Origin: Macrostomum lignano
Taxonomy: Eukaryota
Assembly: GCA_002269645.1 (NCBI GenBank)
Contig: NIVC01001675.1
Span: forward strand, 1-64,000
DNA: 64,000 bases
Direction: 5' to 3'
A program made the position numbers and the translations under genes. Below the pieces are notes generated by a model. The model did no database searches. It saw nothing but the letters and a program-made list of their open reading frames with translations, and was not told the DNA's origin. Of the stretch, positions 1,787 to 61,516 are shown one piece after another (positions within the stretch are counted from its first letter, which is position 1; every line of letters begins with the position of its first letter).

Positions 1787-2382
1787 ATTCGACAAACAAC
1801 GACGCCGCCATACTCGCCCTGGGCCAATGACAAGCTGAATCGTGCAACAAAAACATTAAGAAGGTGCTCACTTGTCTCCTAGAAGACCATCAGCAATGGG
1901 ACAAGATGCTGCCAGCCGCTTTGACAGCCCTGCGATCAGCTGTCAACAGTACGACAGGATTCTCGCCGCATTACGTCATCTACGGCGTGCCCTATCGGTA
2001 CCCCATCGATAACACCCTAGACCGCCTGGACGTATCACCGGACCTCCCCGAGTACATCGCAAAGCATCAGCGCAGACTGGCCGAGACCGAGAGGATTGTG
2101 CGACAGCGATTGCGAGCCGAGATCCAGCGCCGCGAAGAGTATTACGAGAACCGACCCAAGCCCGTGGAACTGCAGCCCGGAGACCTGGTCTGCCTGGCCA
2201 ACCCGAAGCTCGAGTTGGGCGAGCTGCCGAAGTTTCACCGGCCGTACAAGAGTATGTACAAGGTCAACAGAAAAGTCGGCGAAGTAGCCTATTGGATCCA
2301 GCCAGCAACAGCCCGACGTGGACGCCCAGCCGAAATGTTGTGGAATCGCGTGTCCTCGCGGTTAAGCTACTGGTTTTACTGA
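1787..2382 (+). mobile_element. Gypsy/Ty3 LTR-retrotransposon integrase fragment (rve C-terminus plus GPY/F-SH3-like tail), frameshifted
   Basis: ORF 1864-2382: WDKMLPAALTALRSAVNSTTGFSPHYVIYG...LQPGDLVCL...PKFHRPYKSMYKVNRKVGEVAYWI. Another frame just upstream gives TTPPYSPWANDKLNR, resembling TTPYHPQxNGxxER. Confidence 0.85.
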
Positions 2383-14309: not shown

Positions 14310-16691
14310 GTGAGTCAGTTTTCTTCGCGTTTTTTGCACTATTTTATACTACTGTAAGTAGTTCAGGTCTTGATTTCTGATTTAGTTCATTGTGTTATCC
14401 TTCATAATTGTAATTCACTCCAGTCCAGTCTCACAACCTCACTGCTCAATCTGACTCAGTCTCACCCCAGTCTCACCATCTCACTGCTCAGTCAGTGACT
14501 TAGTCTCACCTCAGTCTCCATCTCACTGCTCAGTCAGTGACTCAGTCTCACCCAGTCTCACCATCTCACTGCTCAGTCAGTGACTTAGTCTCACCCCAGT
14601 CTCACCATCTCACTGCTCAGTCATTGACTCAGTCTCACCCCAGCCTCACCATCTCACTGCTCAATCAGTGACTCAGTCTCACCCAGTCTCACCCAGTCTC
14701 ACCATCTCACTGCTCAGTCAGTGACTCAGTCTCACCCCAGCCTCACCATCTCACTGCTCAATCAGTGACTCAGTCTCACCCCAGTCTCCATCTCACTGCT
14801 CAGTCAGTGACTCAGTCTCACCCAGTCTCACCATCTCACTGCTCAGTCAGTGACTCAGTCTCACCCCAGTCTCCATCTCACTGCTCAGTCAGTGACTCAG
14901 TCTCACCCAGTCTCACCATCTCACTGCTCAGTCAGTGACTTAGTCTCACCCCAGTCTCACCATCTCACTGCTCAGTCATTGACTCAGTCTCACCCCAGCC
15001 TCACCATCTCACTGCTCAATCAGTGACTCAGTCTCACCCCAGTCTCACCATCTCACTGCTCAGTCAGTGACTCAGTCTCACCCCAGCCTCGCCATCTCAC
15101 TGCTCAATCAGTGACTCAGTCTCACCCCAGTCTCACCATCTCACTCAAACTCGCAAATCTCGCCGCAGACTCGCCGCTGTCCCCATGCGCTGGCAGCGAG
15201 GGCAGTTCCTCGGTGCAGCACCAGCAGCTGCAGGTGACCTCAAACGACATGGACAAAGTCCGCAGCACCATCAAGCAGTTTGCCCGCGACTGGTCATTAG
15301 ACGGCGCCAATGAGAGAGCTCTATGCTACGAACCCATGCTCAGAGAGATCGATCGATTATTTCCAGCTGAAAATTGCCCGGATAGGTCCGAGGTTCGAGT
15401 CCTGGTGCCAGGCGCCGGACTAGGTCGATTGGCCTGGGAAGTGGCCAGATTAGGATTCAGTTGCCAGGGCAACGAGTGGAGCTTGTATATGCTGTTCTGC
15501 AGCTACTTTGTTATTAACAGGTGAGAAAAGTAGAAAAATCGCTTTTAGTTTTGTGTTTTTACAGTGCTTTTACAGGTAGAATTGTGTTGCTAAGGAGGTT
15601 TTACAGGTAGAATTGAGTTGCTAAGGCGGTTTTTCAAGTAGAATTGTGTTGCTAAGGGAGGTTTTTCAGATAGAATTGTGTTGCTAAGGGAGGTTTTTCA
15701 GGTAGAATTGTGTTGCTAAGGCGGTTTTTCAATTAGAATTGTGTTGCTAAGGCGGTTTTTTAGGTAGAATTGTGTTGCTAAGGGAGGTTTTTCAGATAGA
15801 ATTGTGTTGCTAAGGTTTTTCAGGTAGAATTATGTTGCTAAGGCGGTTTTTTAGGTAGAATTGTGTTGCTAAGGCGGTTTTTTAGGTAGAATTAAGTTGC
15901 TAAGGCGGTTTTTCAGGTAGAATTGTGTTGCTAAGGGAGGTTTTTCAGATAGAATTGTGTTGCTAAGGGAGGTTTTTCAGGTAGAATTGTGTTGCTAAGG
16001 CGGTTTTTCAATTAGAATTGTGTTGCTAAGGCGGTTTTTTAGGTAGAATTGTGTTGCTAAGGGAGGTTTTTCAGATAGAATTGTGTTGCTAAGGTTTTTC
16101 AGGTAGAATTATGTTGCTAGGGTGATTTGACAGCTGTTGCTTAGGCATTTAATTTATTCAAACACTCGTAGGTGCTCGGAGCCCAACTGCTTTACCCTGT
16201 ACCCCTGGGTGCACCAGTTCTGCAACAACTGGTCCTGGGCAGACCAGCTCCGGCCAATCACCTTCCCCGACGTGTCGCCGGCGGATCTGCCGAAATCCGG
16301 CAGTTTCTCCATGGCCGCTGGCGATTTCTTAGAAATCTACACGGAGCCGGAGGCGTGGGACTGCGTAGCAACGGTGTTCTTCATCGATACTGCGCACAAC
16401 ATTGCGGCCTATGTGGAGACCATTGGCAGAATTTTAAAGCCGGGCGGCTACTGGATCAACCTGGGCCCCCTGCTGTATCATTTTGCCGATGTGCCCGGGG
16501 AGGCCAGCATCGAGCTGGACTATGCCACACTGCGCCAGCTGGTGCTGGGTTCCGGGTTCGAGTTGCTAACGGAGAATACAGATATTCGATGCGGCTACAC
16601 ACAGAACGAGGCCAGCATGCTTCGGTATGAGTACAGGTGCGCTTACTTTGTTGCTAGGAAACCGCTTTGCTGTGGCCATGATGCAGAATGA
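14057..16691 (+). CDS. CARNMT1: Carnosine N-methyltransferase (N2227-like), 3 coding exons, 374 aa
   Basis: Exons 14057-14309, 15169-15520, 16172-16691 join in frame with GT-AG sites (phases 1, 2). Motifs [72 protein letters not shown]. Confidence 0.95.
14420..15145. repeat. ~42-44 bp minisatellite in CARNMT1 intron 1
   Basis: Unit TCTCACCATCTCACTGCTCAGTCAGTGACTCAGTCTCACCCCAG. Confidence 0.95.
15169..15520 (+). CDS. CARNMT1: CARNMT1 coding exon 2
   Basis: CCGCAG acceptor; [11 protein letters not shown]-binding motif; donor GTGAGA at 15521. Confidence 0.92.
15575..16120. repeat. ~31 bp minisatellite in CARNMT1 intron 2
   Basis: Unit AGGTAGAATTGTGTTGCTAAGGCGGTTTTTC. Confidence 0.95.
16172..16691 (+). 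CDS. CARNMT1: CARNMT1 coding exon 3
   Basis: CGTAG acceptor; FFIDTAHN and WINLGPLL motifs; TGA stop. Confidence 0.92.
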
Positions 16692-20408: not shown

Positions 20409-21189
20409 TCACTTGTTCTGCTTAGCTTTAAACAGCTTACCGAGGCTGCCGGCGCTGCCGTGAAGTCGGCGACGCTTAACGGCGGCCAGTCGACGGAACA
20501 GGCTGCTGCCCGACCTGCGGGTGAGAGCGGCGTCAGGCTGCTGCTGCTGATAGTGCTGCTGTTGCTGCTCTTGTAGACTCTGCTCCTCATCTTCAGCCCT
20601 GTCATTATCATCATCAGTATGCATCGCTCCGTCTACTTGATCTTGTCCGAAGCCGGTGCTCAGAATTATTTGTTGATGCGGATGCTGCGGAGGTTGTTGC
20701 TGCTGGTGCTGCATCATTAGAGTGGTTGGATGGCTTTGATATTGCTGGTATTGCTGCTGCTGCTGCTGCTGCTGGTACGGCTGAGTGACAATGCCATTGG
20801 CAATGTGCTGCAAAGGCGGCAGCAGGGTGGGTCCGCAGGCGCTGCTCAGGCTTCCATTGCTGTTGCAGTGATTGCTGCTACTGGAAGCTGCGGCTACGGC
20901 AGCAGCGGCCGCCGCCATCTGCTGCGGATTGATGAAGTACATGGGCGCCGCGGGAGCGACAGCGCTTGACATGGCTGTGCTGGCTGTGGAGCCTTGAAGA
21001 CTGAAGTATTGCACACTGGATGGCGCTGGCGGCTGCTGCTGCTGCTGCTGTTGTTGATGGCTCAGCTGGGTGAGGTACTGCTGCTCCTGCTGCTGCTGCT
21101 GCATGAGCGCCTGGCCACCAGCCTCCAGCATCTCAGTTGATGATGTTTTTGTAGTAACGGCAATGGAACCCGACATGTCCGGCATGTGA
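20409..21189 (-). CDS. p53: p53-like coding exon 5 (Q-rich tail with basic NLS-like [11 protein letters not shown])
   Basis: Acceptor CTCTCCCGCAG, phase 2, continues in the frame of ORF 20409-21206. Confidence 0.65.
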
Positions 21190-24100
21190 CTGCGGGAGAG
21201 TGACATGTTGGCTTAGTTTAAGACTGGAGATTCTCTAGTATATTTGTTTGGTATAGGGCAGCAGCTTTTCTGCTAGATTCCGGTTGCTAAGCAAGCAGAT
21301 TCGGGTTGCTAAGGAAGCGAACATTTCAAAGCAGATTCGGGTTGCTAGGAGAGCAGATTTCAAAGCAGATTCGGGTTGCTAGGAGAGCAGATTTCAAAGC
21401 AGATTCGGGTTGCTAGGAGAGCAGATTTCAAAGCAGATTCGGGTTGCTAGGAGAGCAGATTTCAAAGCAGATTCGGGTTGCTAGGAGAGCAGATTTCAAA
21501 GCAGATTCGGGTTGCTAGGAGAGCAGATTTCAAAGCAGATTCGGGTTGCTATGAGAGCAGATTTCAAAGCAGATTCGGGTTGCTAGGAGAGCAGATTTCA
21601 AAGCAGATTCGGGTTGCTATGAGAGCAGATTTCAAAGCAGATTCGGGTTGCTAGGAGAGCAGATTTCAAAGCAGATTCGGGTTGCTATGAGGGCAGATTT
21701 CAAAGCAGATTCGGGTTGCTAGGGGAGCAGTTTTCATAGTAGATTTGGGTTGCTAACGAAGGGCGATTCTCTTTTAAGCATCAGCCGATATGTATCGTAG
21801 TATGCATCTCTGCGGCAATTGCACTCACTAGACAGAGGTGGCATTGTTGTGCTCTCCGGTGCTCGATGCCACAGATGGGCAGTGGGCGCTGCTGTGCAGG
21901 GAGTCCGCAGGCGAATTCTCGCGCGGCATGACCTGCTGTTGCTGCTGCTGTTGCTGCTGCTGTTGCTGCCCGGGTTCTTGCTTCGTGGCAGCAGAGTTGG
22001 CCAGCTTGTTTGTGGCAGCGGCCGCGGCAGTGGCGACGCCTTTGACAATGAGCGGCAGGCTGGCTAGGTAGGCTCTCAGAGCGCTGGCGATCAGCTCGCG
22101 ACTGTCTTGGTTGCTGAGCAGGGCGCCGCGTATAATAAGGCTGCCGTCCGCTGCTTGCTCAAGGACCTCCAGCTGACTGAGGCTGTCGGTTGATGCGGAC
22201 GGCAGGGTCTGCACTGCCGACGCCGCCCCGCCGTCTAGCAGCTCGAGCTCGTCACTTGGATCGGCGTTGGAGCCCTTAGGAGGAATTCGGGATTATTAGG
22301 GTTTGAGTTGGGATTGGGGATCTTTGTCGGTATTCTTTGTTGGGATTCTATGGGGATCTTTGCTGGGATTCTATGGGGATCTTTGTTGGGATTCTATGGG
22401 GATCTTTGTTGGGATTCTATGGGGACCTTGTTGGGATTCTATGGGGATCTTTGGTGACATTCTATGGGGACCTTGTTGGGATTCTACGGGGATCTTTGTT
22501 GGGATTCTATGGGGACCTTGTTGGGATTCTATGGGGATCTTTGGTGACATTCTATGGGGACCTTGTTGGGATTCTATGGGGATCTTTGTTGGTATTCTAT
22601 GGGGACCTTGTTGGGATTCTATGGGGATCTTTGTTGGGATTCTATGGGGACCTTGTTGGGATTCTATGGGGATCTTTGGTGACATTCTATGGGGACCTTG
22701 TTGGGATTCTACGGGGATCTTTGTTGGGATTCTATGGGGACCTTGTTGGGATTCTATGGGGATCTTTGGTGACATTCTATGGGGACCTTGTTGGGATTCT
22801 ATGGGGATCTTTGTTGGTATTCTATGGGGACCTTGTTGGGATTCTATGGGGATCTTTGGTGACATTCTATGGGGACCTTGTTGGGATTCTATGGGGATCT
22901 TTGTTGGGATTCTATGGGGATCTTTGTTGGGATTCTATGGGGATCTTTGGTGACATTCTATGGGGATCTTAGTTGGGATTCTACGGGGATCTTTGTTGGG
23001 ATTCTACGGGGATCTTTGTTGGGATTCTATGGGGAGATTATTGGGATTCTATAGGGAGTTTATTGGGATTCTAGTTAGCCTACAAAAATATGTAAGTCGG
23101 ATCTCAAATCTCTGGTCTGAGCCAGCACTGGGGATCAAAGAATCTATTCGGGACTAATCTGGGACTCACAGTTGCCTGTCTGCTCTTGGCCTTGGCCTTG
23201 CTGCACTTGACGCCCGGCTCGGAGCCGTACAGCTGCACATAGTAGTCGAACTTCTCCTGCCCCTGTGTGCGCAGCACCTTGGCCCTCTGCCAGCGAGTGT
23301 TGTGCGACTCCAGGTGGCCGCAGCCCATCCGGCAGCCCATCTGCGCCGGCGTCAGAAACTGCGTGACCTCGTTTAGAATGTCCCGCTCCGGCGAGGTGAC
23401 CATGCGCATGCGGAAGACGCAGCGGCCTTGGCTGAACCAGCGGCCGGTGAGGCTGTCCAGAGTCTCCAGCTGCACCGAGGTGAACGTGTCCTTGGAGTTT
23501 GGCGCCGTGGCGTCGTGGCTGTGCGTTGTCATACAGGTGTAATAGAGCATCAGCTCGATAGGCCCGCTGCTTTGCCGATTGTTGATGGGCAGCACGGCGT
23601 AGACTCGGTCGCGGCTGTCCGTGTGGTACTCCACCGAGTCGTGACGCACGATCACAAGGCTGTTCTTGTGCAGCGTGGGGCTGCGGCTGTCCGCCGGCCA
23701 GTACGCCTGCAGCGCCTCCGGGATGTTTTTGGACGAGTTCGTGTCGCGCTTGTCCGCTCCGTACCAGCCTCCGCGGTGCTTCTGATCGCTGCACACTGTG
23801 CACCTGCGGGGGGCGTGTGAGAGACGGATCTTGAGTCAAGGATCCCAGCATGATGATGAGGATCTGAGAGGCTGGCCCAGAAATTGAGGATCTGGGAGGC
23901 TGGTGGCCCAGCAACTGAGGATCTGGGAGGCTGGCCCAGCAACTGAGGATCTGGGAGGCTGGCCCAGCAACTGAGGATCTGCATGGGAGGCTGGCCCAAC
24001 AACTTGGGATCTGGGAGTTGGAGACTGGTGGCCCAGCAACTGAGGATCTGGGAGGGTATTTCGATATTTTAAGATAACATCTTAATTTGCACATTTATTA

Positions 24101-27100
24101 AAAAAATGGTTCGCTAATCAGTTCGATATCTAGTAGTTTGATAGTAACAGGCAATATAAATTAATTGTAGGTAGCAAACAGCTATTTTTTAATCCTGCGT
24201 ATTATTTTTATTTCCTTTAGAAAGAAGCCACGTGACCCACGCGTCATTTTTGTTGTGGAAATATAAAACTACAAAGATGTTGCCAGCCATAAATATCTGT
24301 CAGCCAAGCGCAGGGTAGAGAATGACACTCGAATAGAAAGATAATTATTCTTGGCTAGCGAGTGCAAGATGCTGAGTGAGTCATGCTCATCGAGTTCCCC
24401 CATTTTATATTTTCTGCACATAAAAATTATTGTTATATTGGTCTTTGAGGTATAGGAGCGGCCATTGTTCAGCGAATATAAATTTCATCAGCATTTCATC
24501 TCCCTCCTGCCGCTCTGTGCCGCCGTTCTGTTATGACTCTTTGTGCTCGCTTGAGTGCCAGGCTGCTCGGGCGGTGAATCGTGAGTCATGCTCAGCAACT
24601 GGAGCTCGGTCTGAATGGGTCTGGGGGAGGGGAGGGGGCTTCGTGGCGGCAGCTGCTGAGGCAGCCACTCGCTCTGTCCCCCCGTCCCAGTCAGTCACTG
24701 GAAATTTTCCGTTTTGACAGGCCAGCGGGGGGGGGGTCCTAGGGGGCACCTGGCGGTTTCGCGTGCCGCTTCTTCTTAACGACCCCAATCTTCTATTCTA
24801 TCATTTTTCTGGACCTTAGCAACTAAGGGTTTTAAGGCAGAGAGACTTCTCAAACAATGCGCAAGTTTTTTTCGGTTAATATTTTTTCAGCTCCAGATTT
24901 GAAGGAGTGTTAGGCGGCTTTTATTGCTTGGCATTGTTAAATGCGGAATATTTTATAAAGACGAGATAAATAAGCTTTGCTTCGTTTACCGAGATATTTC
25001 ATTTCTTGATGAACTCGCGAGATGTCCCAAGTAAATTCGGCACCCCCACTCCAGTCTTTGCTAAAAAAACAACATTGTAAAATACAGGCTCCCAGAAGTC
25101 CCCTTTGAAAAGTTTGAAAACACGGGGCCCTTTTTGTCATCTGCTCTGACTAACTGACTAACTTGTGTTGTGTGGTTTCTTGTTATTGCGGTTCCGAGTG
25201 TGGGGGGGTCGCCTGCCTGCTTTGCATAACTTTTTGCTTTATGATTTCAAAGCCAAGTTTCAAGCTGTCTAGCATTTTGATACAGTGCCAACGTTCTCAA
25301 TCATTTATCATTGGCGCGTTGTAATAGGAATTGTTCTCAACTGTCCCACACCCGACTCTGACAGAGAAGGTTTTCGAATTTATAATTTAGCTTTTATGAG
25401 GCCTTGGCAACAAAAGCCAGATCCGTACATTATAACTGAGTTGAGGGATGAGGCAGTGTGACTCACAGCGCAACCTTCAGTTCCAAAAATCCGCGGCAAC
25501 ACACTGATTGCGTAAAGCGTAGATCTGAGAGGGAGCTACTAAGTCTGCTTTAATAAGTGATTAAAATCTTAATAATGCTAATGACAGCAGGTAGTTATGG
25601 AATTTGAAACAGTTGCCAAGTTAACGGTTTTCGGGGCTTCTAATTTAATGCCTTTGTGTTCCCTGCTCAGTCAGTGCTCAGTTTTCATTCTTCTCTTAGT
25701 AGATGACTCACTGTCTCACTGTCCATGTTAGTTATTAGTGAATTATTTTGCTAAGTCTTAGATTGTCTGGTTGGAGTGTTTCATAAGTTTGCTTTGAAAT
25801 TTGTGTCAGCGAAGCTTGAATTATAGATTAAAAGCTATGAAGTGAGAGTCTGGGAGCCCCATGGATTAGAGTCTGGGAGCGCCATGGATTAGAGTCTGGG
25901 AGCGCCATGAAGTGAGAGTCAGGCAGCGATATGATGTAAGAGTCAGGGAGCGATATGAAGTGAGAGTCAGGCAGCGATATGAATTGAGAGTCAGGGAGCG
26001 ATATGAAGTGAGAGTCAGGGAGCGATATGATGTGAGAGTCAGGGAGCGATATGAAGTGAGAGTCAGGGAGCGCCATGAAGTGAGAGTCAGGGAGCGATAT
26101 AAAGTGAGAGTCAGGGAGCGATATGATGTGAGAGTCAGGGAGCGATATGATGTGAGAGTCAGGGAGCGATATGAAGTGAGAGTCAGGGAGCGATATGAAG
26201 TGAGAGTCAGGGAGCTATATGATGTGAGAGTCAGGGAGCGATATGAAGTGAGAGTCAGGGAGCGATATGAAGTGAGAGTCAGGGAGCAATATGATGTGAG
26301 AGTCAGGGAGCGATATGAAGTGAGAGTCAGGCAGCGATATGATGTGAGAGTCAGGGAGCGATATGAAGTGAGAGTCAGGGAGCGATATGAAGTGAGAGTC
26401 AGGCAGCGATATGAAGTGAGAGTCAGGGAGCGATATAAAGTGAGAGTCAGGGAGCCATATGATGTGAGAGTCAGGGAGCGATATAAAGTGAGAGTCAGGG
26501 AGCGATATGAAGTGAGAGTCAGGGAGCGATATGATGTGAGAGTCAGGGAGCGATATGAAGTGAGAGTCAGAGAGCACCATGAACAAATTGCCTAGCCAAG
26601 AGTGCCAATGAGACAGGAGCATTGTCACTGGTTAAGAAAATTAAATAACATGGCAGTTGTGGAGTTGTGGCACGATTCTGTTTACAACAATTTCAGAGTA
26701 CATTTTTATCCCAAATATGTCTCATCCCATAGTAAAGATAATATTATTTAATCATAAACACAATTATTATAGAGGTCGTAATTGCAGTCTGTGCACTGAC
26801 TGGCGGTGGAACCAAAAACAACAAAAGCAGAAGTAGTACAGAACAATGGGTTCGCTTAATATTTTTCATAAACAATCCACGTTCTGGTAGAAAAACACAA
26901 CCGGTGACATTCAAAATTCCCGCTCTGGAAGTTTGTAAAGGCGGGTTGCTTCTGGTCGCTGTTTTTCCACGATCGGCAAACTTTATGTAGAGTTCGATGC
27001 CGCACAAAGAGCGGGTTTTGGGCAGTGGGGTTGGGAAAAATTGAATCATAAAACTGAGCGGGAAGGCCCAAAGGCATGATGGAAACCAAGGTAGAAATTG

Positions 27101-28196
27101 TGTGGGGGCGGTTCGTGGCGGGGGAGGTGAGGGGTTGGGGCCTTGGGGGTGAGTTTTTGACACGGTGCCAAGAACGCAGAATTGTGCTGGCTAACTAAAT
27201 CGATCGGAAATAGAATAAGTTGGGGGGGGTTGAGCTCGGAGCGAGGGCCATAGGCCATCGACAAAGACTTAAATAATAATGTCTTTGTCAACGCTAACGA
27301 TCGGACAAGCCTGTTAAATCCATTGCTTGCTTTTGCCTCGAGGCCAGTTTGACTTTTTAACACATTTTGCCATTCAAGCGTTGCGTCTTCTACAGTTTAC
27401 ACTTTGTTTTGTTTAACTTGAGCATTGTCACCTCGGTCATGCATCAGTGCTTGAGGCGATCACAGTATCCTTTGTTTTTAGTCTTGCCTGCGGTTTTTAG
27501 CGCTAGGTTTTGAGCAGTATAAGCCTGTTACGTTAAATCTCCCTTAGGGGGTGTGGGGGGCGAATTCGAGCATGGCACATCAGCAGTATCCAAGGCTTTG
27601 CTGTGGGCTGCTTGGTAATCCTTCATGCGTGACTGACTGACCCACCTAGACCTGCTACCCCCCCCCCCAACTGCCTGAGCACCTGATCCAGTGGGCAGAT
27701 AGACATCAGTTACAATTGGTGATGATATATCTACCAATGCTGCTGTGATGCAATCATCTTTTGTCTGCCAGTCAGCCAAGCCCAGCATTCTACAAACAAA
27801 GAAGGAATCCGTGCTTTCGAACTGGCTGGTGGGTTCCTCTCTCTCCCTTCCTTTTCTTCTTTCTAATCGGCAATTGAAACTTTTCTATCGAATATAAGCA
27901 TTTTCATTATTGCGTAACTGAGGGCACGAAGGCTTTGAGGGGGCGCCTCTAGAGCTCGGTGCGTGAGACCCATTCCGGGGCGAATGGTGCGAGAGGGAAT
28001 GAGTCGGAGTCGTGTGCGGACTGTGAGAAGCCCTCTCATATTTTTGGGTGTCTGTCTGGCATCTGGCCAAGTTTGTCTCCAGTTGTTTGTTTCGTCTGCT
28101 CTTCAGCTAAGACTGTCAATAGGGGCTGGTTTTCACTACTGGGTCTTTGTGCGGTCTCAAGCGCAGGGGTTAGGGATAGATAATTGATTGAGATAA

Positions 28197-28240
<44 letters not shown>

Positions 28241-28241
28241 G

Positions 28242-28272
<31 letters not shown>

Positions 28273-28273
28273 G

Positions 28274-28341
<68 letters not shown>

Positions 28342-28346
28342 CAGAC

Positions 28347-28415
<69 letters not shown>

Positions 28416-29961
28416 GGACAGAAATACAGAAAGGCGGCCACTCACTCCTTGACGGGCAGCTGGTGCTGTCTGAAGGCTCCGCACCGAATCACCAGCCGCA
28501 CAGCCTGGTTGTTAGCCGCGGCGGCTTCGAAGTTGCCGTGCAGGTAGAGCCGCACGGGCGCCAGCTCCTTGCACCAGAGGCTGGCCAGCACCTCCCGGTT
28601 CTTCAACACGATGCTCTTAGTGATCTTCTCGTCTGGCGCGGTCAGCGCCCTTTCCATGATGTCCTTCTCTGCCGAGTGGAAGCCGATGGCATACCACAGG
28701 CTGGACCCGCCCGAAGCATTCAGTCGCTGGTGAAACGAAGCCGCAGTCTGGGACTCGATCTCCTCCAGCCTCAGCTGCAGGTTGTACGGGCCCGCCTCGC
28801 TCTGGGTGCTGATGCTGGCGTCGTCGGGGTGACTTGTTGGCGTCGCTGAACTGGTCGGAGCGTCGACTTCTAGGTCGATGAGACCGTCTGACTGGTCAGC
28901 CAGATGCTGCTGCTGGCTGCAGTGGCTGGGGGTTGTCGATGAAGGCGTCTTGATGACGGAGCTCTGGGCCCCGCAGGGGCTGCCGCCGCTCATCGCCGAG
29001 GCTGCCGAAGCTGACGCCGCGTTCTGGCCGCTGTTGTAGTAGGCGTCATTGTTCAGCCGGAAGTCGCTGGGTGTGAGATGGATCGGGTGGGGGTAGGTGG
29101 CTGGTCATCGTTGATTGTTTTCTCAATGCGGGAGATGCACTGTTGTCGTCTGCTGTCATCTGCCCCCTGAGATACCCAATCCGCCCCCCTGACACACCCA
29201 ATCCACACCCTGAGACACCTAATCCGCCCCCTGAGACACCCAACCCGCTCCCTGAGACAACCAATCCGCCCCCTGAGACACCCAATCCGCCCCCTGAGAC
29301 ACCCAATCCACCCCTGAGACACCTAATCCACACCCTGAGAGACACCCAATCCGCCCCCTGAGACACCCAATCCACACCCTGAGAGACACCCAATCCACAC
29401 CCTGAGAGACACCCAATCCGCCCCCTGAGACACCCAATCCGCTCCCTGAGACACCCAGTCCGCCCCCTGAGACTCTTAATCCGGCCGGCCCCCCTGAGAC
29501 TCTTAATCCGGCCTCTGAGAGACACAATCCGCCTCCTGAGACACCCAATCCGCCCTCTGAGACACCCAACCCGCTCCCTGAGACACCCAATCCGCCTCCT
29601 GAGACACCCAATCCGCCCCCTGGGACTCTTAATCCGGCCTCTGGGCCCTGGGCCCTGTGACACCCAATTCGCCCCGAGACACCCAATCCGCCCCCTGAGA
29701 CACCCAATTCGCCCCGAGACACCCAATCCGCCCCCTGAGACACCAAAATTCGCCGCCTGAGACACTTAAACCGCCCTCTGGGAGTAAGACACAATCCGCC
29801 CATGATACTCACTTTGTGAAGCCGCCGCACTGCGACCAGTGCTGCTGGAAGACTCCGTCCTGAGCGCCCATGCAGTCAAACTTCATCACGGAGTTTTGGC
29901 CGCCACCCCACACCATGTCCTGCTGCTGTTGCTGCTGACTGGGATGCATGGAGTCGGTCAT
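20409..29961 (-). CDS. p53: Highly divergent p53-family transcription factor, 5 coding exons, ~876 aa
   Basis: Exons 29961-29813, 29066-28446, 23803-23170, 22274-21829, 21189-20409 join in frame (phases 2, 2, 0, 2), all GTGAGT donors with CAG/AAG acceptors, 2631 nt total. DBD-like motifs: [91 protein letters not shown]...RELIASAL resembles the oligomerisation domain. Confidence 0.8.
21285..21735. repeat. 34 bp minisatellite in p53-like intron 4
   Basis: Unit GCAGATTCGGGTTGCTAGGAGAGCAGATTTCAAA. Confidence 0.95.
21829..22274 (-). CDS. p53: p53-like coding exon 4 (oligomerisation-like region, poly-Q)
   Basis: Acceptor TCCTCCTAAG, phase 0; ends TA|GTGAGT. Confidence 0.75.
22305..23075. repeat. 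22-23 bp minisatellite in p53-like intron 3
   Basis: GGGGATCTTTGTTGGGATTCTAT alternating with GGGGACCTTGTTGGGATTCTAT. Confidence 0.95.
23170..23803 (-). CDS. p53: p53-like coding exon 3 (C-terminal half of DBD)
   Basis: Acceptor CCCCCCGCAG; [20 protein letters not shown]; donor GTGAGT. Confidence 0.85.
23860..24056. repeat. ~28 bp degenerate minisatellite in p53-like intron 2
   Basis: Unit CTGGGAGGCTGGCCCAGCAACTGAGGAT. Confidence 0.85.
25840..26580. repeat. 24 bp minisatellite in p53-like intron 2
   Basis: Unit GTGAGAGTCAGGGAGCGATATGAA. Confidence 0.95.
28195..28415. repeat. (GATA)n/(GACA)n microsatellite
   Basis: Seen directly. Confidence 0.97.
28446..29066 (-). CDS. p53: p53-like coding exon 2 (N-terminal half of DBD)
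   Basis: Acceptor CACCCAG; ends ...QHQLPVK GA|GTGAGT. Confidence 0.8.
29165..29790. repeat. ~21-23 bp minisatellite in p53-like intron 1
   Basis: Unit ACCCAATCCGCCCCCTGAGAC. Confidence 0.93.
29813..29961 (-). CDS. p53: p53-like coding exon 1
   Basis: [21 protein letters not shown]...GGFT; donor GTGAGT, phase 2 matches the next exon. The true start may lie further upstream. Confidence 0.65.
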
Positions 29962-41561: not shown

Positions 41562-44500
41562 TCACCGATGGTCTACAGCCACCGGAGCATAGGTGAAGCC
41601 GGCGGTCTCCCTCAGCAGCGGCATGTCCACAATGACGCGGCCATCGCTCCGCAGCCGGGCGGTCACCAGCCGGGCGTCCACATTGGCTGGCAAGTCGAAC
41701 TCGTCGCGGAATTCCCGCATTGACGTTTTGCCGGCCGACTTCACCTCGCGCCGGCCGTGGACCGACAGGCGTCGGCCGTTGTCAACCGTGGCGACTGTGA
41801 GGTCCTGGGGCTCGAACTCGGGACCTACGTCGACTTCGAGTTGAAAAGCGCTGGCGGTGCGAACACCGCTGCCCTGCTGCTGCTGCTGATGTCGGGGCGA
41901 GCCGAGAGGCTGGGAGAAGGCAGGCGAACCCGACCTCGGCGACAGTCGGGGACTGTTTGAGTAGAGCCTGCGGGAGTTGAGTTCAGGCTGATCTGGATCG
42001 AACTGATTCGACAATGCTGAGTTTGGCGCCATTGACTCCTCAGATATTTTTGCAAAAATCACCGTGACCCTCAAATTCAACAGATCCATTGACGTTGACC
42101 CCCACCCTAGATTTAAGGAACTATTGATTGACCCCCTGGTTTGACCTCCTGGTTTTCAAGGTCAATTGATTGACCTCCCCCTAGATGACCATATGGTTCT
42201 CAACTCCAATCAGCTGACCCCCCTTAGATGATCCCTGGATTTTAGGTACAATCAATTGCCCCCCCCCCTTAGATGACCCCCTGGATTTTATTGACCCCCC
42301 TTAGATGACCCCCGGATTTTAGCTACAACCAATTGACCCCCCCCTTAGATGACCCCCCGGATTTTAGCTACAACCAATTGACCCCCCTTAAATGACGCCC
42401 CGGATTTTAGCTTCAATCAATTGACCCCCCTTAGATGACGCCCCGGATTTTAGCTTCAACCAATTGACCCCCTTAGATGACGCCCCGGATTTTAGCTTCA
42501 ATCGATTGACCCCCCCAGATGACCCCCCGGATTTTAGCTACAACCAATTGACCCCCCTTAGATGACCCCCCGGATTTTAGCTACAACCAACTGACCCCCC
42601 TTAGATGACGCCCCGGATTTTAGCTTCAATCGATTGACCCCCCTTAGATGACGCCCCGGATTTTAGCTTCAATCAATTGACCCCCCCCCCCAGATGACCC
42701 CCCGGATTTTAGCTACAACCAATTGACCCCCCTTAGATGACGCCCCGGATTTTAGCTTCAATCAAATGCCCCCCCCCAGATTTCAATTGACCCCCTTAGA
42801 TGCCCCCCGGTTCTCAGCGCGATGTCCTGTGACCCCCCTCTCCGCAGCGCTGCTCACCTGCTCTGCTGCTGCAGGGCCGGCTGCTTCCCGGAATACTGGG
42901 GCGGCATCACCGGAGCGGTGACTGACAACTGACCCTCGGCCACAGTGGACCGGACACCGCGAGGGTCGACCCCGTCCGGCAGCGAGAACTGCTCATCGAA
43001 CGAGGCGGAGCTCTGCTTGCCGGTGCGCGGGTCCACCCGCTTGGAGTTGCCGCAGACCCGGACCGTGCGGTCTCCCACCAGCGAAGTCTTCAAGTCGCCA
43101 GGCTCGTAGTCGCGAACGTCGAACACCACTCGATAGACCAGCGAGCCGTCCGGCTGCCGCTCGATTCGGCCAGTTCGGCCACTGTCCGAGCAGCCGGGGT
43201 CGACTTGGCCGGGTGTCCGGAAAAAACCGTCCATTCGTTCTTGCATCGAGCGAGTGAGTTTGTCGAACTCCTCGTCCCAGACTGGGGAGGCGCGGCGGAG
43301 GTCTGCGGAGGGTGGGGGAGGTGGGCTGTTGGGTGGAGATTCTGTGGGTTGTTGGGTGGAGATTCTGTGGGCTGTTGGGTGGAGATTCTGTGGGCTGTTG
43401 GGTGGAGATTCTGTGGGTTGTTGGGTGGAGATTCTGTGGGCTGTTGGGTGGAGATTCTGTGGGCTGTTGGGTGGAGATTCTGTGGGTTGTTGGGTGGAGA
43501 TTCTGTGGGTTGTTGGGTGGAGATTCTGTGGGTTGTTGGGTGGAGATTCTGTGGGCTGTTGGGTGGAGATTCTGTGGGTTGTTGGGTGGAGATTCTGTGG
43601 GTTGTTGGGTGGAGATTCTGTGGGTTGTTGGGTGGAGATTCTGTGGGCTGTTGGGTGGAGATTCTGTGGGCTGTTGGGTGGAGATTCTGTGGGCTGTTAG
43701 GTGGAGATTCTGTGGGTTGTTGGGTGGAGATTCTGTGGGTTGTTGGGTGGAGATTCTGTGGGCTGTTGGGTGGAGATTCTGTGGGCTGTTGGGTGGAGAT
43801 TCTGTGGGTTGTTGGGTGGAGATTCTGTGGGTTGTTGGGTGGAGATTCTGTGGGCTGTTGGGTGGAGATTCTGTGGGCTGTTGGGTGGAGATTCTGTGGG
43901 CTGTTGGGTGGAGATTCTGTGGGTTGTTGGGTGGAGATTCTGTGGGCTGTTGGGTGGAGATTCTATGGGCTGTTGGGTGGCGATTCTGTGGGCTGTTAGG
44001 TGGAGATTCTGTGGGTTGTTGGGTGGAGATTCTGCGGGCTGTTGATGAAGATTGTGTGGGCTGTTGATGAAGATTCTGTGGGCTGTTGATGTGAAGATTC
44101 TGTGGGCTGTTGATGAAGATTCTGTGGGCTGTTGATGCGAAGATTCTGTGGGCTGTTGATGAAGATTGTGTGGGCTGTTCCATGCTAAGCTAACTGCAGA
44201 AGTGCTCTTTTCCAGCTCAAATTACAAAAATGCGCAATAAAACTCAGACCATAGCGGCAATATTGTGCTTGTATGTAATTTGGCAGAAACACATGTTGGG
44301 CTCAAATGCCGTGTGTACAGTGTACAGGTATCAGGGGTATTTGACTGACAGACAGAGGCAGACAGAGGAAGTCTCAGTGCTCCAACCAACTGATTACAAA
44401 GGTAAATAGATTTAGAGATAAAAAGCAAGCACACCCGCTCTCTCTATGCAAATTGAACTGCGCAATGCGTGTGGGCCTGTTTGCAGAAATGACTTTGTTG

Positions 44501-53065: not shown

Positions 53066-61516
<8,451 letters not shown>

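What the first reader, a model, noticed from the sequence alone, without database searches (positions are those of the whole stretch)
23380..28460. p53-family DBD with swapped zinc ligands and a remodelled DNA-contact surface
Joining exons 2 and 3 gives VKECTVC where human p53 has VRRC176PHH179. The L3 segment is YTCMTTH where p53 has YMC238NSSC242. The His ligand therefore appears moved from position 2 to position 4 (C-C-C-H instead of C-H-C-C), still four ligands. R273, P278, R280 and D281 equivalents are kept (RMVTSPERD), but C275, C277 and G279 are replaced (V, S, E), and the MNRR (R248) loop becomes ATAPNSKD. This predicts an intact fold with altered DNA specificity. It could be a lineage-specific p53 paralogue that simple BLAST would miss.
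Basis: partly seen in the sequence, partly recalled or inferred. Interest (0 to 1): 0.85.

Follow-up and report, generated by a model that had tools for sequence, protein, structure and literature searches.

The report
Divergent flatworm p53-family gene, unannotated
The window holds a Macrostomum lignano gene for a very divergent member of the p53/p63/p73 family. Its four presumed zinc-binding positions read Cys-Cys-Cys-His instead of the usual Cys-His-Cys-Cys, and public databases mis-splice and mis-name the gene.

Summary

The window is Macrostomum lignano. The only public model (A0A1I8GLG0, "START domain-containing protein") needs an 11-nt micro-intron and drops 52 residues of the domain.

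Homology to the p53 DNA-binding domain is weak but consistent:
- Pfam P53 is the only credible hit (17-20 bits, below the 27-bit cutoff).
- hhalign scores 33.7, against 15.0 +/- 2.8 for 300 column shuffles (maximum 27.8).
- A model built without any p53 sequences shows the p53 strand and helix order.
- A model built with p53-family sequences in its alignment matches p53 structures (Foldseek E 1.6e-5), but that result is partly circular.

One paralogue exists (PAA59970.1, 25% identity, weak C-terminal SAM hit). It keeps C-x2-C, C-x3-H and FRxRxVxSPxRD, and it encodes ECxxC within a single exon, which supports the junction.

Not shown: zinc binding or ligand geometry, DNA specificity, an oligomerisation domain, and whether M. 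lignano also has a canonical p53.

Verdict: a new variant of a known family, of moderate interest.

The parts
29813..29961 (-). Exon 1. ATG at 29961; encodes M1 to T49 plus two bases of the N50 codon. Contains VFQQHW (29853-29836), an F-x3-W motif like the p53/p63/p73 transactivation motif; this resemblance is by eye only.
   Evidence: 100% tblastn match to P0001 residues 1-49. Donor AA|GTGAGT.
28446..29066 (-). Exon 2. Low-complexity Ser/Thr/Ala-rich linker, then the N-terminal half of the DBD. The DBD starts at GPYNLQLRL (28792-28766; compare human GSYGFRLGF). SLWCKEL (28582-28562) aligns with human MFCQLAK. The exon ends with the first two bases of the E257 codon.
   Evidence: MAFFT and hhalign place these motifs collinearly with the human S1 and S2' strands.
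23804..28445 (-). Intron 2, 4642 nt, GT..AG. Filled with (AGAT)n at 28191-28413, a 24-bp unit x31 at 25836-26575 and a 28-bp repeat at 23857-24055.
23170..23803 (-). Exon 3. C-terminal half of the DBD and the following linker. Contains C258 and C261, [17 protein letters not shown]347 and H351, [21 protein letters not shown] and the [10 protein letters not shown] motif.
   Evidence: Pfam P53 profile positions 91-189 match here. tblastn of the paralogue DBD gives E 7.6e-17.
23791..28447 (-). ECTVC. The E257 codon spans the splice junction (28447-28446 plus 23803). C258 (23802-23800) is the C176 equivalent; C261 (23793-23791) is the H179 equivalent.
   Evidence: E-C-x2-C is invariant in the paralogue. 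Both AF2 runs predict a helix starting here, as for p53 helix H1.
23521..23541 (-). YTCMTTH. C347 is the C238 equivalent; H351 is the C242 equivalent.
   Evidence: hhalign alignment. T-C-x3-H is invariant in the paralogue, whose L3 has the same length as human L3.
23488..23511 (-). ATAPNSKD. The L3 segment in place of human GGMNRRP. It has a 3-residue insertion, N247 is kept, R248 becomes S and R249 becomes K.
   Evidence: Modelled at low confidence (residues 209-218 of the DBD construct).
23380..23427 (-). [16 protein letters not shown]. Strand S10 and the start of helix H2. R390=R273, V392=C275, T393=A276, S394=C277, P395=P278, E396=G279, R397=R280, D398=D281.
   Evidence: G-R-x2-F-R-x-R-x-V-x-S-P-x-R-D is invariant between the paralogues. 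This is the best-modelled part (pLDDT 80-91).
23314..23343 (-). [12 protein letters not shown]-x-G-C-x2-G-C-x-H motif just after the DBD. It is conserved in the paralogue and absent from vertebrate p53/p63/p73. It could be an extra metal-binding knuckle.
   Evidence: Function is inferred only.
21828..22274 (-). Exon 4 through the stop codon. Includes [26 protein letters not shown] (22142-22065) and a poly-Q run.
   Evidence: Acceptor ..cctaag|GGC. The public model is frameshifted here. No oligomerisation-domain HMM support.

Best explanation
The minus-strand gene at 29961..21828 of this Macrostomum lignano window encodes a 616-aa, highly divergent transcription factor of the p53/p63/p73 family.

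Its DNA-binding domain (about residues 142-405, exons 2 and 3) appears to keep these features:
- the p53 beta-sandwich order of strands S1-S10 and helices H1 and H2;
- the loop-sheet-helix motif, with the phosphate-contacting Arg (R390 = R273) and the base-contacting Arg-Asp pair (R397-D398 = R280-D281);
- a four-ligand metal site bridging L2 and L3.

At that site the ligand identities are permuted. The L2 His (H179) is Cys, and the second L3 Cys (C242) is His. The site is still Cys3His, but the imidazole comes from the other loop.

L1 and L2 carry large insertions (roughly 45 and 25 residues). L3 has 3 extra residues and Ser/Lys in place of R248/R249.

Inferred mechanism: zinc holds L2 and L3 together as in p53, and the protein binds a p53-type CWWG-centred half-site through R397. 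Minor-groove, L1 and flanking contacts differ from canonical p53.

Shown here: the gene model, the motifs, their conservation in one paralogue, and statistically supported remote homology. Inferred: zinc binding, the details of the fold, DNA specificity and biological role. By analogy with Smed-p53 and schistosome p53-1, the role would be in the neoblast or epidermal lineage; alternatively it could act in the damage response.
For: Organism and gene model:
- Exons are 100% identical to UniRef A0A1I8GLG0 of M. lignano.
- All four exons have GT-AG sites and stay in frame.

Homology:
- Pfam PF00870 is the only credible hit: E 5.9e-4 and 20.2 bits on the DBD alone.
- hhalign P is 4e-4. It aligns YTCMTTH with YMCNSSC and [11 protein letters not shown] with VRVCACPGRD. 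The score of 33.7 was reached by 0 of 300 column shuffles.
- Against a vertebrate-DBD HMM, 1/2000 and 0/2000 shuffles reached the observed scores.
- In the 36-sequence alignment, G1, C74, H161, Y175, D178, P188, C206, L228, E229, G242, R243, F246, R249, P254, R256 and D257 of the construct are invariant.

Structure:
- The AF2 model built from the two paralogues alone has strands and helices in the p53 order, and its top Foldseek PDB hit is the p53 DBD.
- The model from the 36-sequence alignment has core strands at pLDDT 70-91. It gives 139 PDB hits at E<1e-3, and all 50 matches listed are p53 core domain.

Paralogue P0002 (E 4.6e-16, 25% identity):
- It keeps all four ligand positions. Only 9 of the 20 Cys/His in the window DBD are conserved in it.
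- It has a weak C-terminal SAM hit, as in the p63/p73 architecture.

Background: the human ligands are C176, H179, C238 and C242 (PMC13106391, PMC9043292). Flatworm p53 homologues are established regulators (PMC9478680).
Against: - The Pfam score is below the gathering cutoff (27 bits). The paralogue's DBD gets no Pfam P53 hit at all.
- hhalign probability is only 35-37%.
- A profile search of PDB sequences found no p53 chain.
- The model built without p53 sequences is poor (pLDDT 38), and its p53 hit is not significant (E 0.05).
- The better model was built from an alignment containing 34 p53-family sequences, so its p53 fold is partly built in. TM-scores are only about 0.45.
- The L2 segment carrying C258/C261 is modelled at pLDDT about 31-41, and coordinates cannot be inspected.
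- No oligomerisation domain was detected.
- No transcript evidence was available.
Confidence: 0.78

Rival explanations
1. The molecule is the same, but it is not an extra 'paralogue'. M. lignano has no canonical p53, and this gene and PAA59970.1 are the fast-evolving descendants of the single ancestral flatworm p53 (the p53-1 / Smed-p53 lineage), duplicated within Macrostomorpha. This refines the best explanation rather than excluding it.
For: - Exhaustive phmmer finds only the gene itself and one M. lignano paralogue.
- The paralogue keeps a SAM-like C-terminus, which is typical of ancestral p63-type genes.
- Wendt et al. found no p53-2 orthologue in 19 free-living flatworms (PMC9478680).
- A p53-type motif marks the epidermal lineage in comparisons that include M. 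lignano (PMC11398382), so some p53-family factor is active there.
Against: I could not search the M. lignano proteome or genome for a canonical PF00870 gene. The canonical-profile search listed only its best 120 of 923 hits, all vertebrate. No phylogeny was made.
Confidence: 0.45
2. It is not homologous to p53. It is another beta-sandwich DNA-binding domain of the 'p53-like' superfamily (for example CP2/Grainyhead-like), or a new fold, and the motif matches arose by chance or convergence.
For: - All sequence scores are below family thresholds.
- The CP2c/LSF DBD appears at rank 9 for the model built without p53 sequences.
- The PDB sequence-profile search found no p53.
Against: - The shuffle controls reject chance.
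- The matches are collinear over the whole domain, and they fall on the residues that define p53: the zinc-ligand spacing in L2 and L3, and the R-x6-RD loop-sheet-helix motif.
- To my knowledge CP2/Grainyhead domains have no such zinc site.
- p53 is the top hit for both models.
Confidence: 0.08
3. The locus is a decaying or non-expressed copy (pseudogene), or an assembly or prediction artefact, so the unusual ligands and loops are simply degeneration.
For: - No transcript evidence was obtainable.
- The public model is broken.
- Every intron is full of minisatellites.
Against: - The open frame is intact over 616 codons and four exons, all with canonical splice sites.
- The residues that matter (ligands, the RD motif, hydrophobic core positions) are the ones conserved with a 25%-identical paralogue, which indicates purifying selection.
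- The breaks in the public model are reproduced from this very sequence by an implausible 11-nt intron, so they are prediction artefacts, not lesions.
Confidence: 0.06

Closest known systems
Vertebrate p53/p63/p73 DNA-binding domain (Pfam PF00870; for example human p53 core domain, PDB 2AC0/2AHI)
   Same: - Collinear motifs: GSYxFRL-type start, xFCQ/LWCK, C-x2-ligand in L2, HLxRV-like strand, VEY, C-x3-ligand in L3, LE, and GR..F..R....P.RD.
- The R273, P278, R280 and D281 equivalents are kept.
- Predicted strand and helix order matches.
-.
   Different: - About 20% identity, below the Pfam cutoff.
- Ligands read C,C,C,H instead of C,H,C,C.
- R175 is replaced by E in both paralogues. C275/A276/C277/G279 become V/T/S/E. 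R248 becomes S. R282/R283 become I/L.
- About 45 extra residues between S1 and S2', about 25 in L2 and 3 in L3.
- An extra C-x3-C-x-H motif follows H2.
- No detectable tetramerisation domain.
Flatworm p53 homologues: Smed-p53 (Schmidtea mediterranea) and Schistosoma mansoni p53-1/p53-2 (PMC9478680)
   Same: - Same phylum.
- A p53-family DBD with no Pfam-detectable transactivation or tetramerisation domain (as reported for the schistosome genes).
- Two paralogues in one flatworm genome.
   Different: - The schistosome genes pass Pfam PF00870 according to PMC9478680; this one does not.
- None of them is similar enough to appear in an exhaustive phmmer search.
- I could not obtain their sequences, so it is untested whether any shares the C,C,C,H pattern.
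M. lignano paralogue PAA59970.1 / A0A267EEJ4 ('SAM domain-containing protein', BOX15_Mlig030740g1)
   Same: - 25% identity over the whole DBD (E 4.6e-16).
- Same E-C-x2-C, T-C-x3-H, FRxRxVxSPxRD and QxGCxxGCxH motifs.
-.
   Different: - L3 has canonical length, with K-K at positions 248/249.
- It has a C-terminal SAM-like domain (weak, E 0.014).
- The DBD intron is at a different position: after ..VSLVAS, not before the first Cys.
- No Pfam P53 hit.

Membership tests
p53/p63/p73 family (Pfam PF00870 P53 DNA-binding domain) | Match to the family profile at or above its curated (gathering) score | tested here: not met
   16.9-20.2 bits against a cutoff of 27. E is 6e-4 to 6e-3, and only profile positions 91-189 of 193 match. 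The paralogue's DBD has no hit. P53 is nevertheless the only credible family hit.
p53/p63/p73 family | Remote homology to the family that exceeds chance | tested here: met
   hhalign P is 4e-4, with a score of 33.7 against 15.0 +/- 2.8 (maximum 27.8) in 300 column shuffles. With a vertebrate-DBD HMM, 1/2000 and 0/2000 shuffles reached the observed scores.
p53/p63/p73 family | Immunoglobulin-like beta-sandwich with strands S1-S10, helix H1 in L2 and a loop-sheet-helix motif ending in H2 | tested here: inconclusive
   The model from the two paralogues alone has the right order of 11 strands and 2 helices, but pLDDT is 38 and the Foldseek p53 hit has E 0.05. The model from the alignment containing p53-family sequences has a core at pLDDT 70-91 and matches the p53 DBD at E 1.6e-5 and TM about 0.45, but this is partly circular.
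p53/p63/p73 family | Four zinc ligands, two on L2 (C176, H179) and two on L3 (C238, C242), with C-x2-H and C-x3-C spacing | tested here: inconclusive
   All four positions hold metal-binding residues with the same spacing, but the identities are C,C,C,H. All four are conserved in the paralogue. Geometry and metal binding were not testable: L2 is modelled at pLDDT about 31-41 and no coordinates are available.
p53/p63/p73 family | DNA-contact residues K120, S241, R248, R273, A276, C277, R280 and R283 | tested here: inconclusive
   R273 and R280 (plus D281 and P278) are kept. S241 becomes T, A276 becomes T, C277 becomes S, R283 becomes L and R248 becomes S, with K at 249. The K120 equivalent cannot be assigned because L1 is expanded. 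The paralogue has K-K at 248/249.
p53/p63/p73 family | C-terminal oligomerisation (tetramerisation) domain, PF07710 | tested here: not met
   No Pfam hit at E<=10 on exon 4. An HMM of 79 vertebrate oligomerisation domains gives -0.2 bits. Only by-eye resemblances remain (FDYYVQLYG; [14 protein letters not shown]). PMC9478680 reports the same absence for the schistosome p53 genes.
p63/p73-type architecture | C-terminal SAM domain | tested here: not met
   Nothing SAM-like is in the window. The paralogue has weak SAM hits (SAM_2 E 0.014, 16 bits against a cutoff of 20.5). Its best PDB sequence matches are not p63/p73 SAM.
p53/p63/p73 family | Sequence-specific binding to RRRCWWGYYY-type half-sites and transactivation | not testable with these tools
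   This needs SELEX, PBM or DAP-seq and reporter assays. There is only indirect context: a p53-type motif marks the epidermal lineage in flatworm comparisons that include M. lignano (PMC11398382).
CP2/Grainyhead DNA-binding domain (p53-like fold) | Match to the CP2 family profile or structure | tested here: not met
   No Pfam CP2 hit at E<=10. The CP2c/LSF structure appears only at rank 9, E 1.2, for the poor model, and is absent from the 50 matches listed for the better model.

The most novel reading that the evidence does not exclude
M. lignano has no canonical p53. Its only family members are two deeply diverged genes that share a permuted zinc site (Cys3His, with the His supplied by L3 instead of L2), Glu in place of R175, and an extra C-x3-C-x-H metal knuckle after helix H2.

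This would be a natural, long-conserved re-engineering of the metal centre that governs p53 folding. It would also be an independent p53 duplication in a free-living flatworm, which bears on the claim that p53 duplication in flatworms is specific to parasites.
Probability: 0.3. Interest if true: 0.7.

Novelty: new variant of a known kind. Interest (0 to 1): 0.55.

Why it matters
**Zinc site.** The p53 zinc site largely determines whether the domain folds (PMC9043292, PMC7728444). I know of no natural homologue in which the His has moved from L2 to L3. One that has been conserved across two old paralogues would be a ready-made comparison for zinc affinity, redox sensitivity and loop dynamics. 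It would also allow swap-back mutagenesis.

**Flatworm biology.** p53 homologues control the neoblast-to-epidermis lineage. A second, damage-responsive copy was reported as specific to parasites (PMC9478680). Two unrecognised p53-like genes in the early-branching, free-living model M. lignano would extend that picture and give RNAi targets.

**Annotation.** The only public model is mis-spliced and mis-named, so homology-based surveys of p53 in flatworms would miss this gene.

Tried and rejected
- **PDB sequence search with the spliced protein:** only a spurious low-complexity hit.
- **PDB profile search with the two paralogues:** only poly-Pro and ribosomal noise, no p53. The profile included low-complexity tails.
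- **Word-indexed search with the two-paralogue profile:** nothing beyond the gene itself.
- **Exhaustive phmmer:** only the gene itself and one paralogue, so no deep family alignment could be built.
- **AF2 on the two-sequence alignment:** too poor for a significant fold match.
- **Canonical-profile search:** intended to recover flatworm p53s. It listed only its best 120 of 923 hits, all vertebrate, so I could not compare with Smed-p53, p53-1 or p53-2, or test for a canonical M. lignano p53.
- **Oligomerisation domain:** Pfam and a purpose-built HMM found nothing. I dropped my by-eye candidates as evidence.
- **SAM domain in the window:** none. The paralogue's SAM region has no p63/p73 match in PDB sequences.
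- **Literature:** the Pearson & Sanchez Alvarado 2010 paper is not held. The supplements of PMC9478680 and PMC11398382 are not held. No paper in the library describes an M. lignano p53 gene.
- **'START domain' name:** rejected, because P0001 has no Pfam START hit.

Full report
**1. What is in the sequence**

The region is eukaryotic and the gene is on the minus strand. The next exon starts at 23803, after ..cccgcag. Joined, they read [15 protein letters not shown].

Using the only database relative as a guide and reading the flanks, I built a four-exon model:
- exon 1: 29961..29813
- exon 2: 29066..28446
- exon 3: 23803..23170
- exon 4: 22274..21828, including the stop codon

All introns are GT..AG, and the product is 616 aa.

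**2. Source and public annotation**

The exons are 100% identical to UniRef A0A1I8GLG0 of Macrostomum lignano, named "START domain-containing protein". M. lignano is a free-living macrostomorph flatworm.

That model differs from mine in the DBD. It can be reproduced exactly from this window only with an 11-nt "intron" (28591-28581), a donor at 28556 and an acceptor at 23795. It therefore lacks 52 residues ([10 protein letters not shown]...QLPVKECTV), including the first Cys of the metal site. It is also frameshifted in exon 4. It has no Pfam START hit; its only hit is weak P53. The collection that was searched holds no other protein model of this gene.

**3. Is the junction real?**

No cDNA could be consulted. 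Three things support the junction:
- Both splice sites are canonical and the frame is kept.
- An exhaustive phmmer search of 1.84 billion representative proteins found one relative besides the gene itself. This is P0002 (PAA59970.1, BOX15_Mlig030740g1, also M. lignano; E 4.6e-16, 25% identity). A single alignment to it runs from query residue 14 to 293, across the junction.
- In the paralogue's genomic locus, the homologous LRECAQCAEAHARG lies inside one exon (L001 12011-13282). Its DBD intron sits about 28 residues further upstream.

**4. Is it a p53-family DNA-binding domain?**

Sequence evidence is weak but consistent:
- Pfam P53 (PF00870) is the only credible family hit. It scores 16.9-20.2 bits, with E 6e-4 to 6e-3, against a cutoff of 27, and covers only profile positions 91-189.
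- hhalign of the two-paralogue profile against human p53/p63/p73, and against 104 vertebrate DBDs, gives P about 4e-4 and probability 35-37%.
- I checked this score with my own null. Shuffling the columns of the paralogue alignment 300 times gave 15.0 +/- 2.8, maximum 27.8, against the observed 33.7. The reversed alignment gave 10.2.
- An HMM of vertebrate DBDs scored the window protein at 6.9 bits and the paralogue at 12.2 bits. These scores were reached by 1 and 0 of 2000 residue shuffles.
- With relaxed alignment settings the match is collinear over the whole domain. MAFFT places GPYNLQL and GSYEFRV on human GSYGFRL, LWCK on FCQ, LHKNS on QHLIRV, VEY on VEY, and LE on LE.

Structure evidence is weaker:
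- AF2 on the two paralogues alone is poor (pLDDT 38, pTM 0.42). Its elements still come in the p53 order as I know it from the published p53 core-domain structure: S1, S2, S2', S3, S4, H1, S5-S10, H2. Its top Foldseek hit in the PDB is a p53 core domain, but this is not significant (E 0.05).
- A second model used an alignment that added 34 vertebrate p53/p63/p73 DBDs. It reaches pLDDT 58.8 and pTM 0.54, with core strands at 70-91. It gives 139 PDB hits at E<1e-3, and all 50 matches listed are p53 core domain (best E 1.6e-5, TM about 0.45). This second result is partly circular.
- A sequence-profile search of the PDB found no p53.

Taken together, I put homology to the p53 family at roughly 0.8-0.9.

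**5. The zinc ligands**

The human ligands are C176 and H179 (L2/H1) and C238 and C242 (L3) (PMC13106391, PMC9043292).
- In the window protein, L2 reads E-C258-T-V-C261 and L3 reads T-C347-M-T-T-H351. The spacings are the same as in human p53 (x2 and x3), but the identities are C, C, C, H.
- The paralogue reads E-C-A-Q-C and T-C-P-S-S-H. Its L3 has exactly the human length, so H-for-C242 needs no gap.
- Of the 20 Cys/His in the window DBD, only 9 are conserved in the 25%-identical paralogue, and the four ligand positions are among them.
- Both AF2 runs start a helix at C258 (construct residue 117/118), as p53 H1 does at C176/P177.

Weaknesses:
- The hhalign run extended over the whole domain (mact 0.05) opened a gap in L2 that would pair a different residue with H179.
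- MAFFT with many p53 sequences shifted the window's 3-residue L3 insertion.
- L2 is modelled at pLDDT about 31-41.
- I have no coordinates.

The ligand permutation is therefore well supported as a conserved sequence pattern. It is untested as chemistry.

**6. The DNA-contact surface**

From the hhalign alignment, the equivalences are:

| Human p53 | Window protein |
|---|---|
| R273 | R390 |
| C275 | V |
| A276 | T |
| C277 | S394 |
| P278 | P |
| G279 | E |
| R280 | R397 |
| D281 | D398 |
| R282 / R283 | I / L |
| E285 | E |
| N239 | M |
| S241 | T |
| N247 | N |
| R248 | S |
| R249 | K |

A 3-residue insertion precedes the N247 equivalent. R175 is Glu in both paralogues. The K120 equivalent cannot be assigned, because about 45 residues are inserted between S1 and S2'.

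The paralogue has K-K at 248/249 and A-S at 276/277. So the phosphate-contacting and base-contacting Arg residues of the loop-sheet-helix are retained, and the periphery is changed. "Remodelled" is fair. "Altered specificity" is an inference, and it may apply mainly to minor-groove and flanking contacts.

For context, a p53-type motif is reported as a marker of the epidermal lineage in flatworm comparisons that include M. lignano (PMC11398382).

**7. The rest of the protein**

- No tetramerisation domain is detectable by Pfam or by an HMM I built from 79 vertebrate domains.
- There is no SAM domain in the window. The paralogue has a weak SAM hit with no p63/p73 match among PDB sequences.
- Both paralogues share a Q-x-G-C-x2-G-C-x-H motif directly after H2 (window 23343-23314). 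Vertebrate proteins lack it. It could be a second metal site.

**8. Comparison with what is known**

- Schistosome p53-1 and p53-2 pass Pfam PF00870 and lack recognisable transactivation, tetramerisation and SAM domains.
- p53-2 was reported as parasite-specific, with no orthologue in 19 free-living flatworms (PMC9478680).
- Smed-p53 is described as having a DBD highly similar to TP63 (bioRxiv 10.1101/179986).
- The gene here is much more divergent than those. None of them is similar enough to appear in the exhaustive search.
- No paper in the searchable library describes an M. lignano p53 gene.
- I could not obtain other flatworm p53 sequences, because one search listed only vertebrate hits. 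So I cannot say whether C,C,C,H occurs elsewhere, or whether M. lignano also has a canonical p53.

**9. Verdict**

This is a real, intact, mis-annotated gene for a highly divergent p53-family protein, with a conserved permutation of the zinc-ligand identities and expanded loops. It is a new variant of a known kind.

The functional predictions (intact fold, four converging ligands, altered DNA specificity, extra paralogue) remain to be tested. Interest is moderate: 0.55.

Noticed in passing
window 28556-28592 and 23795-23803; exon 4 near 22225: The only public protein model of this gene (UniRef A0A1I8GLG0, 'START domain-containing protein') can be rebuilt from this window only with an 11-nt GT..AG micro-intron (28591-28581), a donor at 28556 and an acceptor at 23795. 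It drops 52 DBD residues and is frameshifted in exon 4. It has no Pfam START hit.
   Followed up: yes
window 23314-23343 (minus strand): A Q-x-G-C-x2-G-C-x-H motif lies right after the DBD. It is invariant between the two M. lignano paralogues and absent from vertebrate p53/p63/p73. It may be an additional metal-binding knuckle.
   Followed up: partly
window 29836-29853 (minus strand), exon 1: VFQQHW near the N-terminus resembles the F-x3-W core of the p53/p63/p73 transactivation motif (p63 FQHIW, p73 FEHLW; these are recalled from memory). It was not tested statistically.
   Followed up: no
window 23224-23250 and 22065-22142 (minus strand): FDYYVQLYG resembles the strand of the p73 tetramerisation domain (TYYLQVRG). 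SLIIRG...[12 protein letters not shown] resembles a strand-Gly-helix. Neither is supported by Pfam or by a purpose-built oligomerisation-domain HMM.
   Followed up: yes
window 29158-29780, 28191-28413, 25836-26575, 23857-24055, 22337-23073, 21293-21755: Every intron of the gene, and the sequence just downstream of its stop codon, holds a long tandem array: a 21-bp unit x30, (AGAT)56, a 24-bp unit x31, a 28-bp unit x5.5, a 45-bp unit x16 and a 34-bp unit x14. Similar arrays produce many spurious long ORFs elsewhere in the window.
   Followed up: partly
window 20409-21206 (minus strand): A 265-aa Gln-rich ORF lies about 600 bp downstream of the stop codon on the same strand, with no Pfam domain. 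It could be an alternative 3' exon of the p53-like gene or a separate gene.
   Followed up: partly
L001 10001-17088 (NIVC01002207.1): The paralogue's DBD intron lies after ..EVSLVAS, about 28 residues upstream of the position of the window gene's intron 2, so the intron positions are not shared. One UniRef model (A0A1I8HBP9, 945 aa) fuses the paralogue to the upstream 2-hydroxyacid dehydrogenase gene.
   Followed up: partly
window 15111-15524 and 16137-16691 (plus strand): Two exons of a carnosine N-methyltransferase gene (Pfam CARME, E 1.5e-36 and 5e-62).
   Followed up: partly
window 41562-42089 and 42854-43246 (minus strand): Two ORFs each carry an Hsp20/alpha-crystallin domain (E 6.6e-9 and 8.5e-11). 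This may be a tandem pair of small heat-shock protein genes, or two domains of one gene.
   Followed up: partly
window 1864-2382 (plus strand); 54257-56669 and 60212-60853 (minus strand): By eye, the first ORF looks like a retroelement integrase fragment, and the latter ORFs look like exons of a cyclic-nucleotide-binding-domain (KCNH-type) potassium channel. None gave a Pfam hit at E<=0.001, so these readings are unverified.
   Followed up: partly
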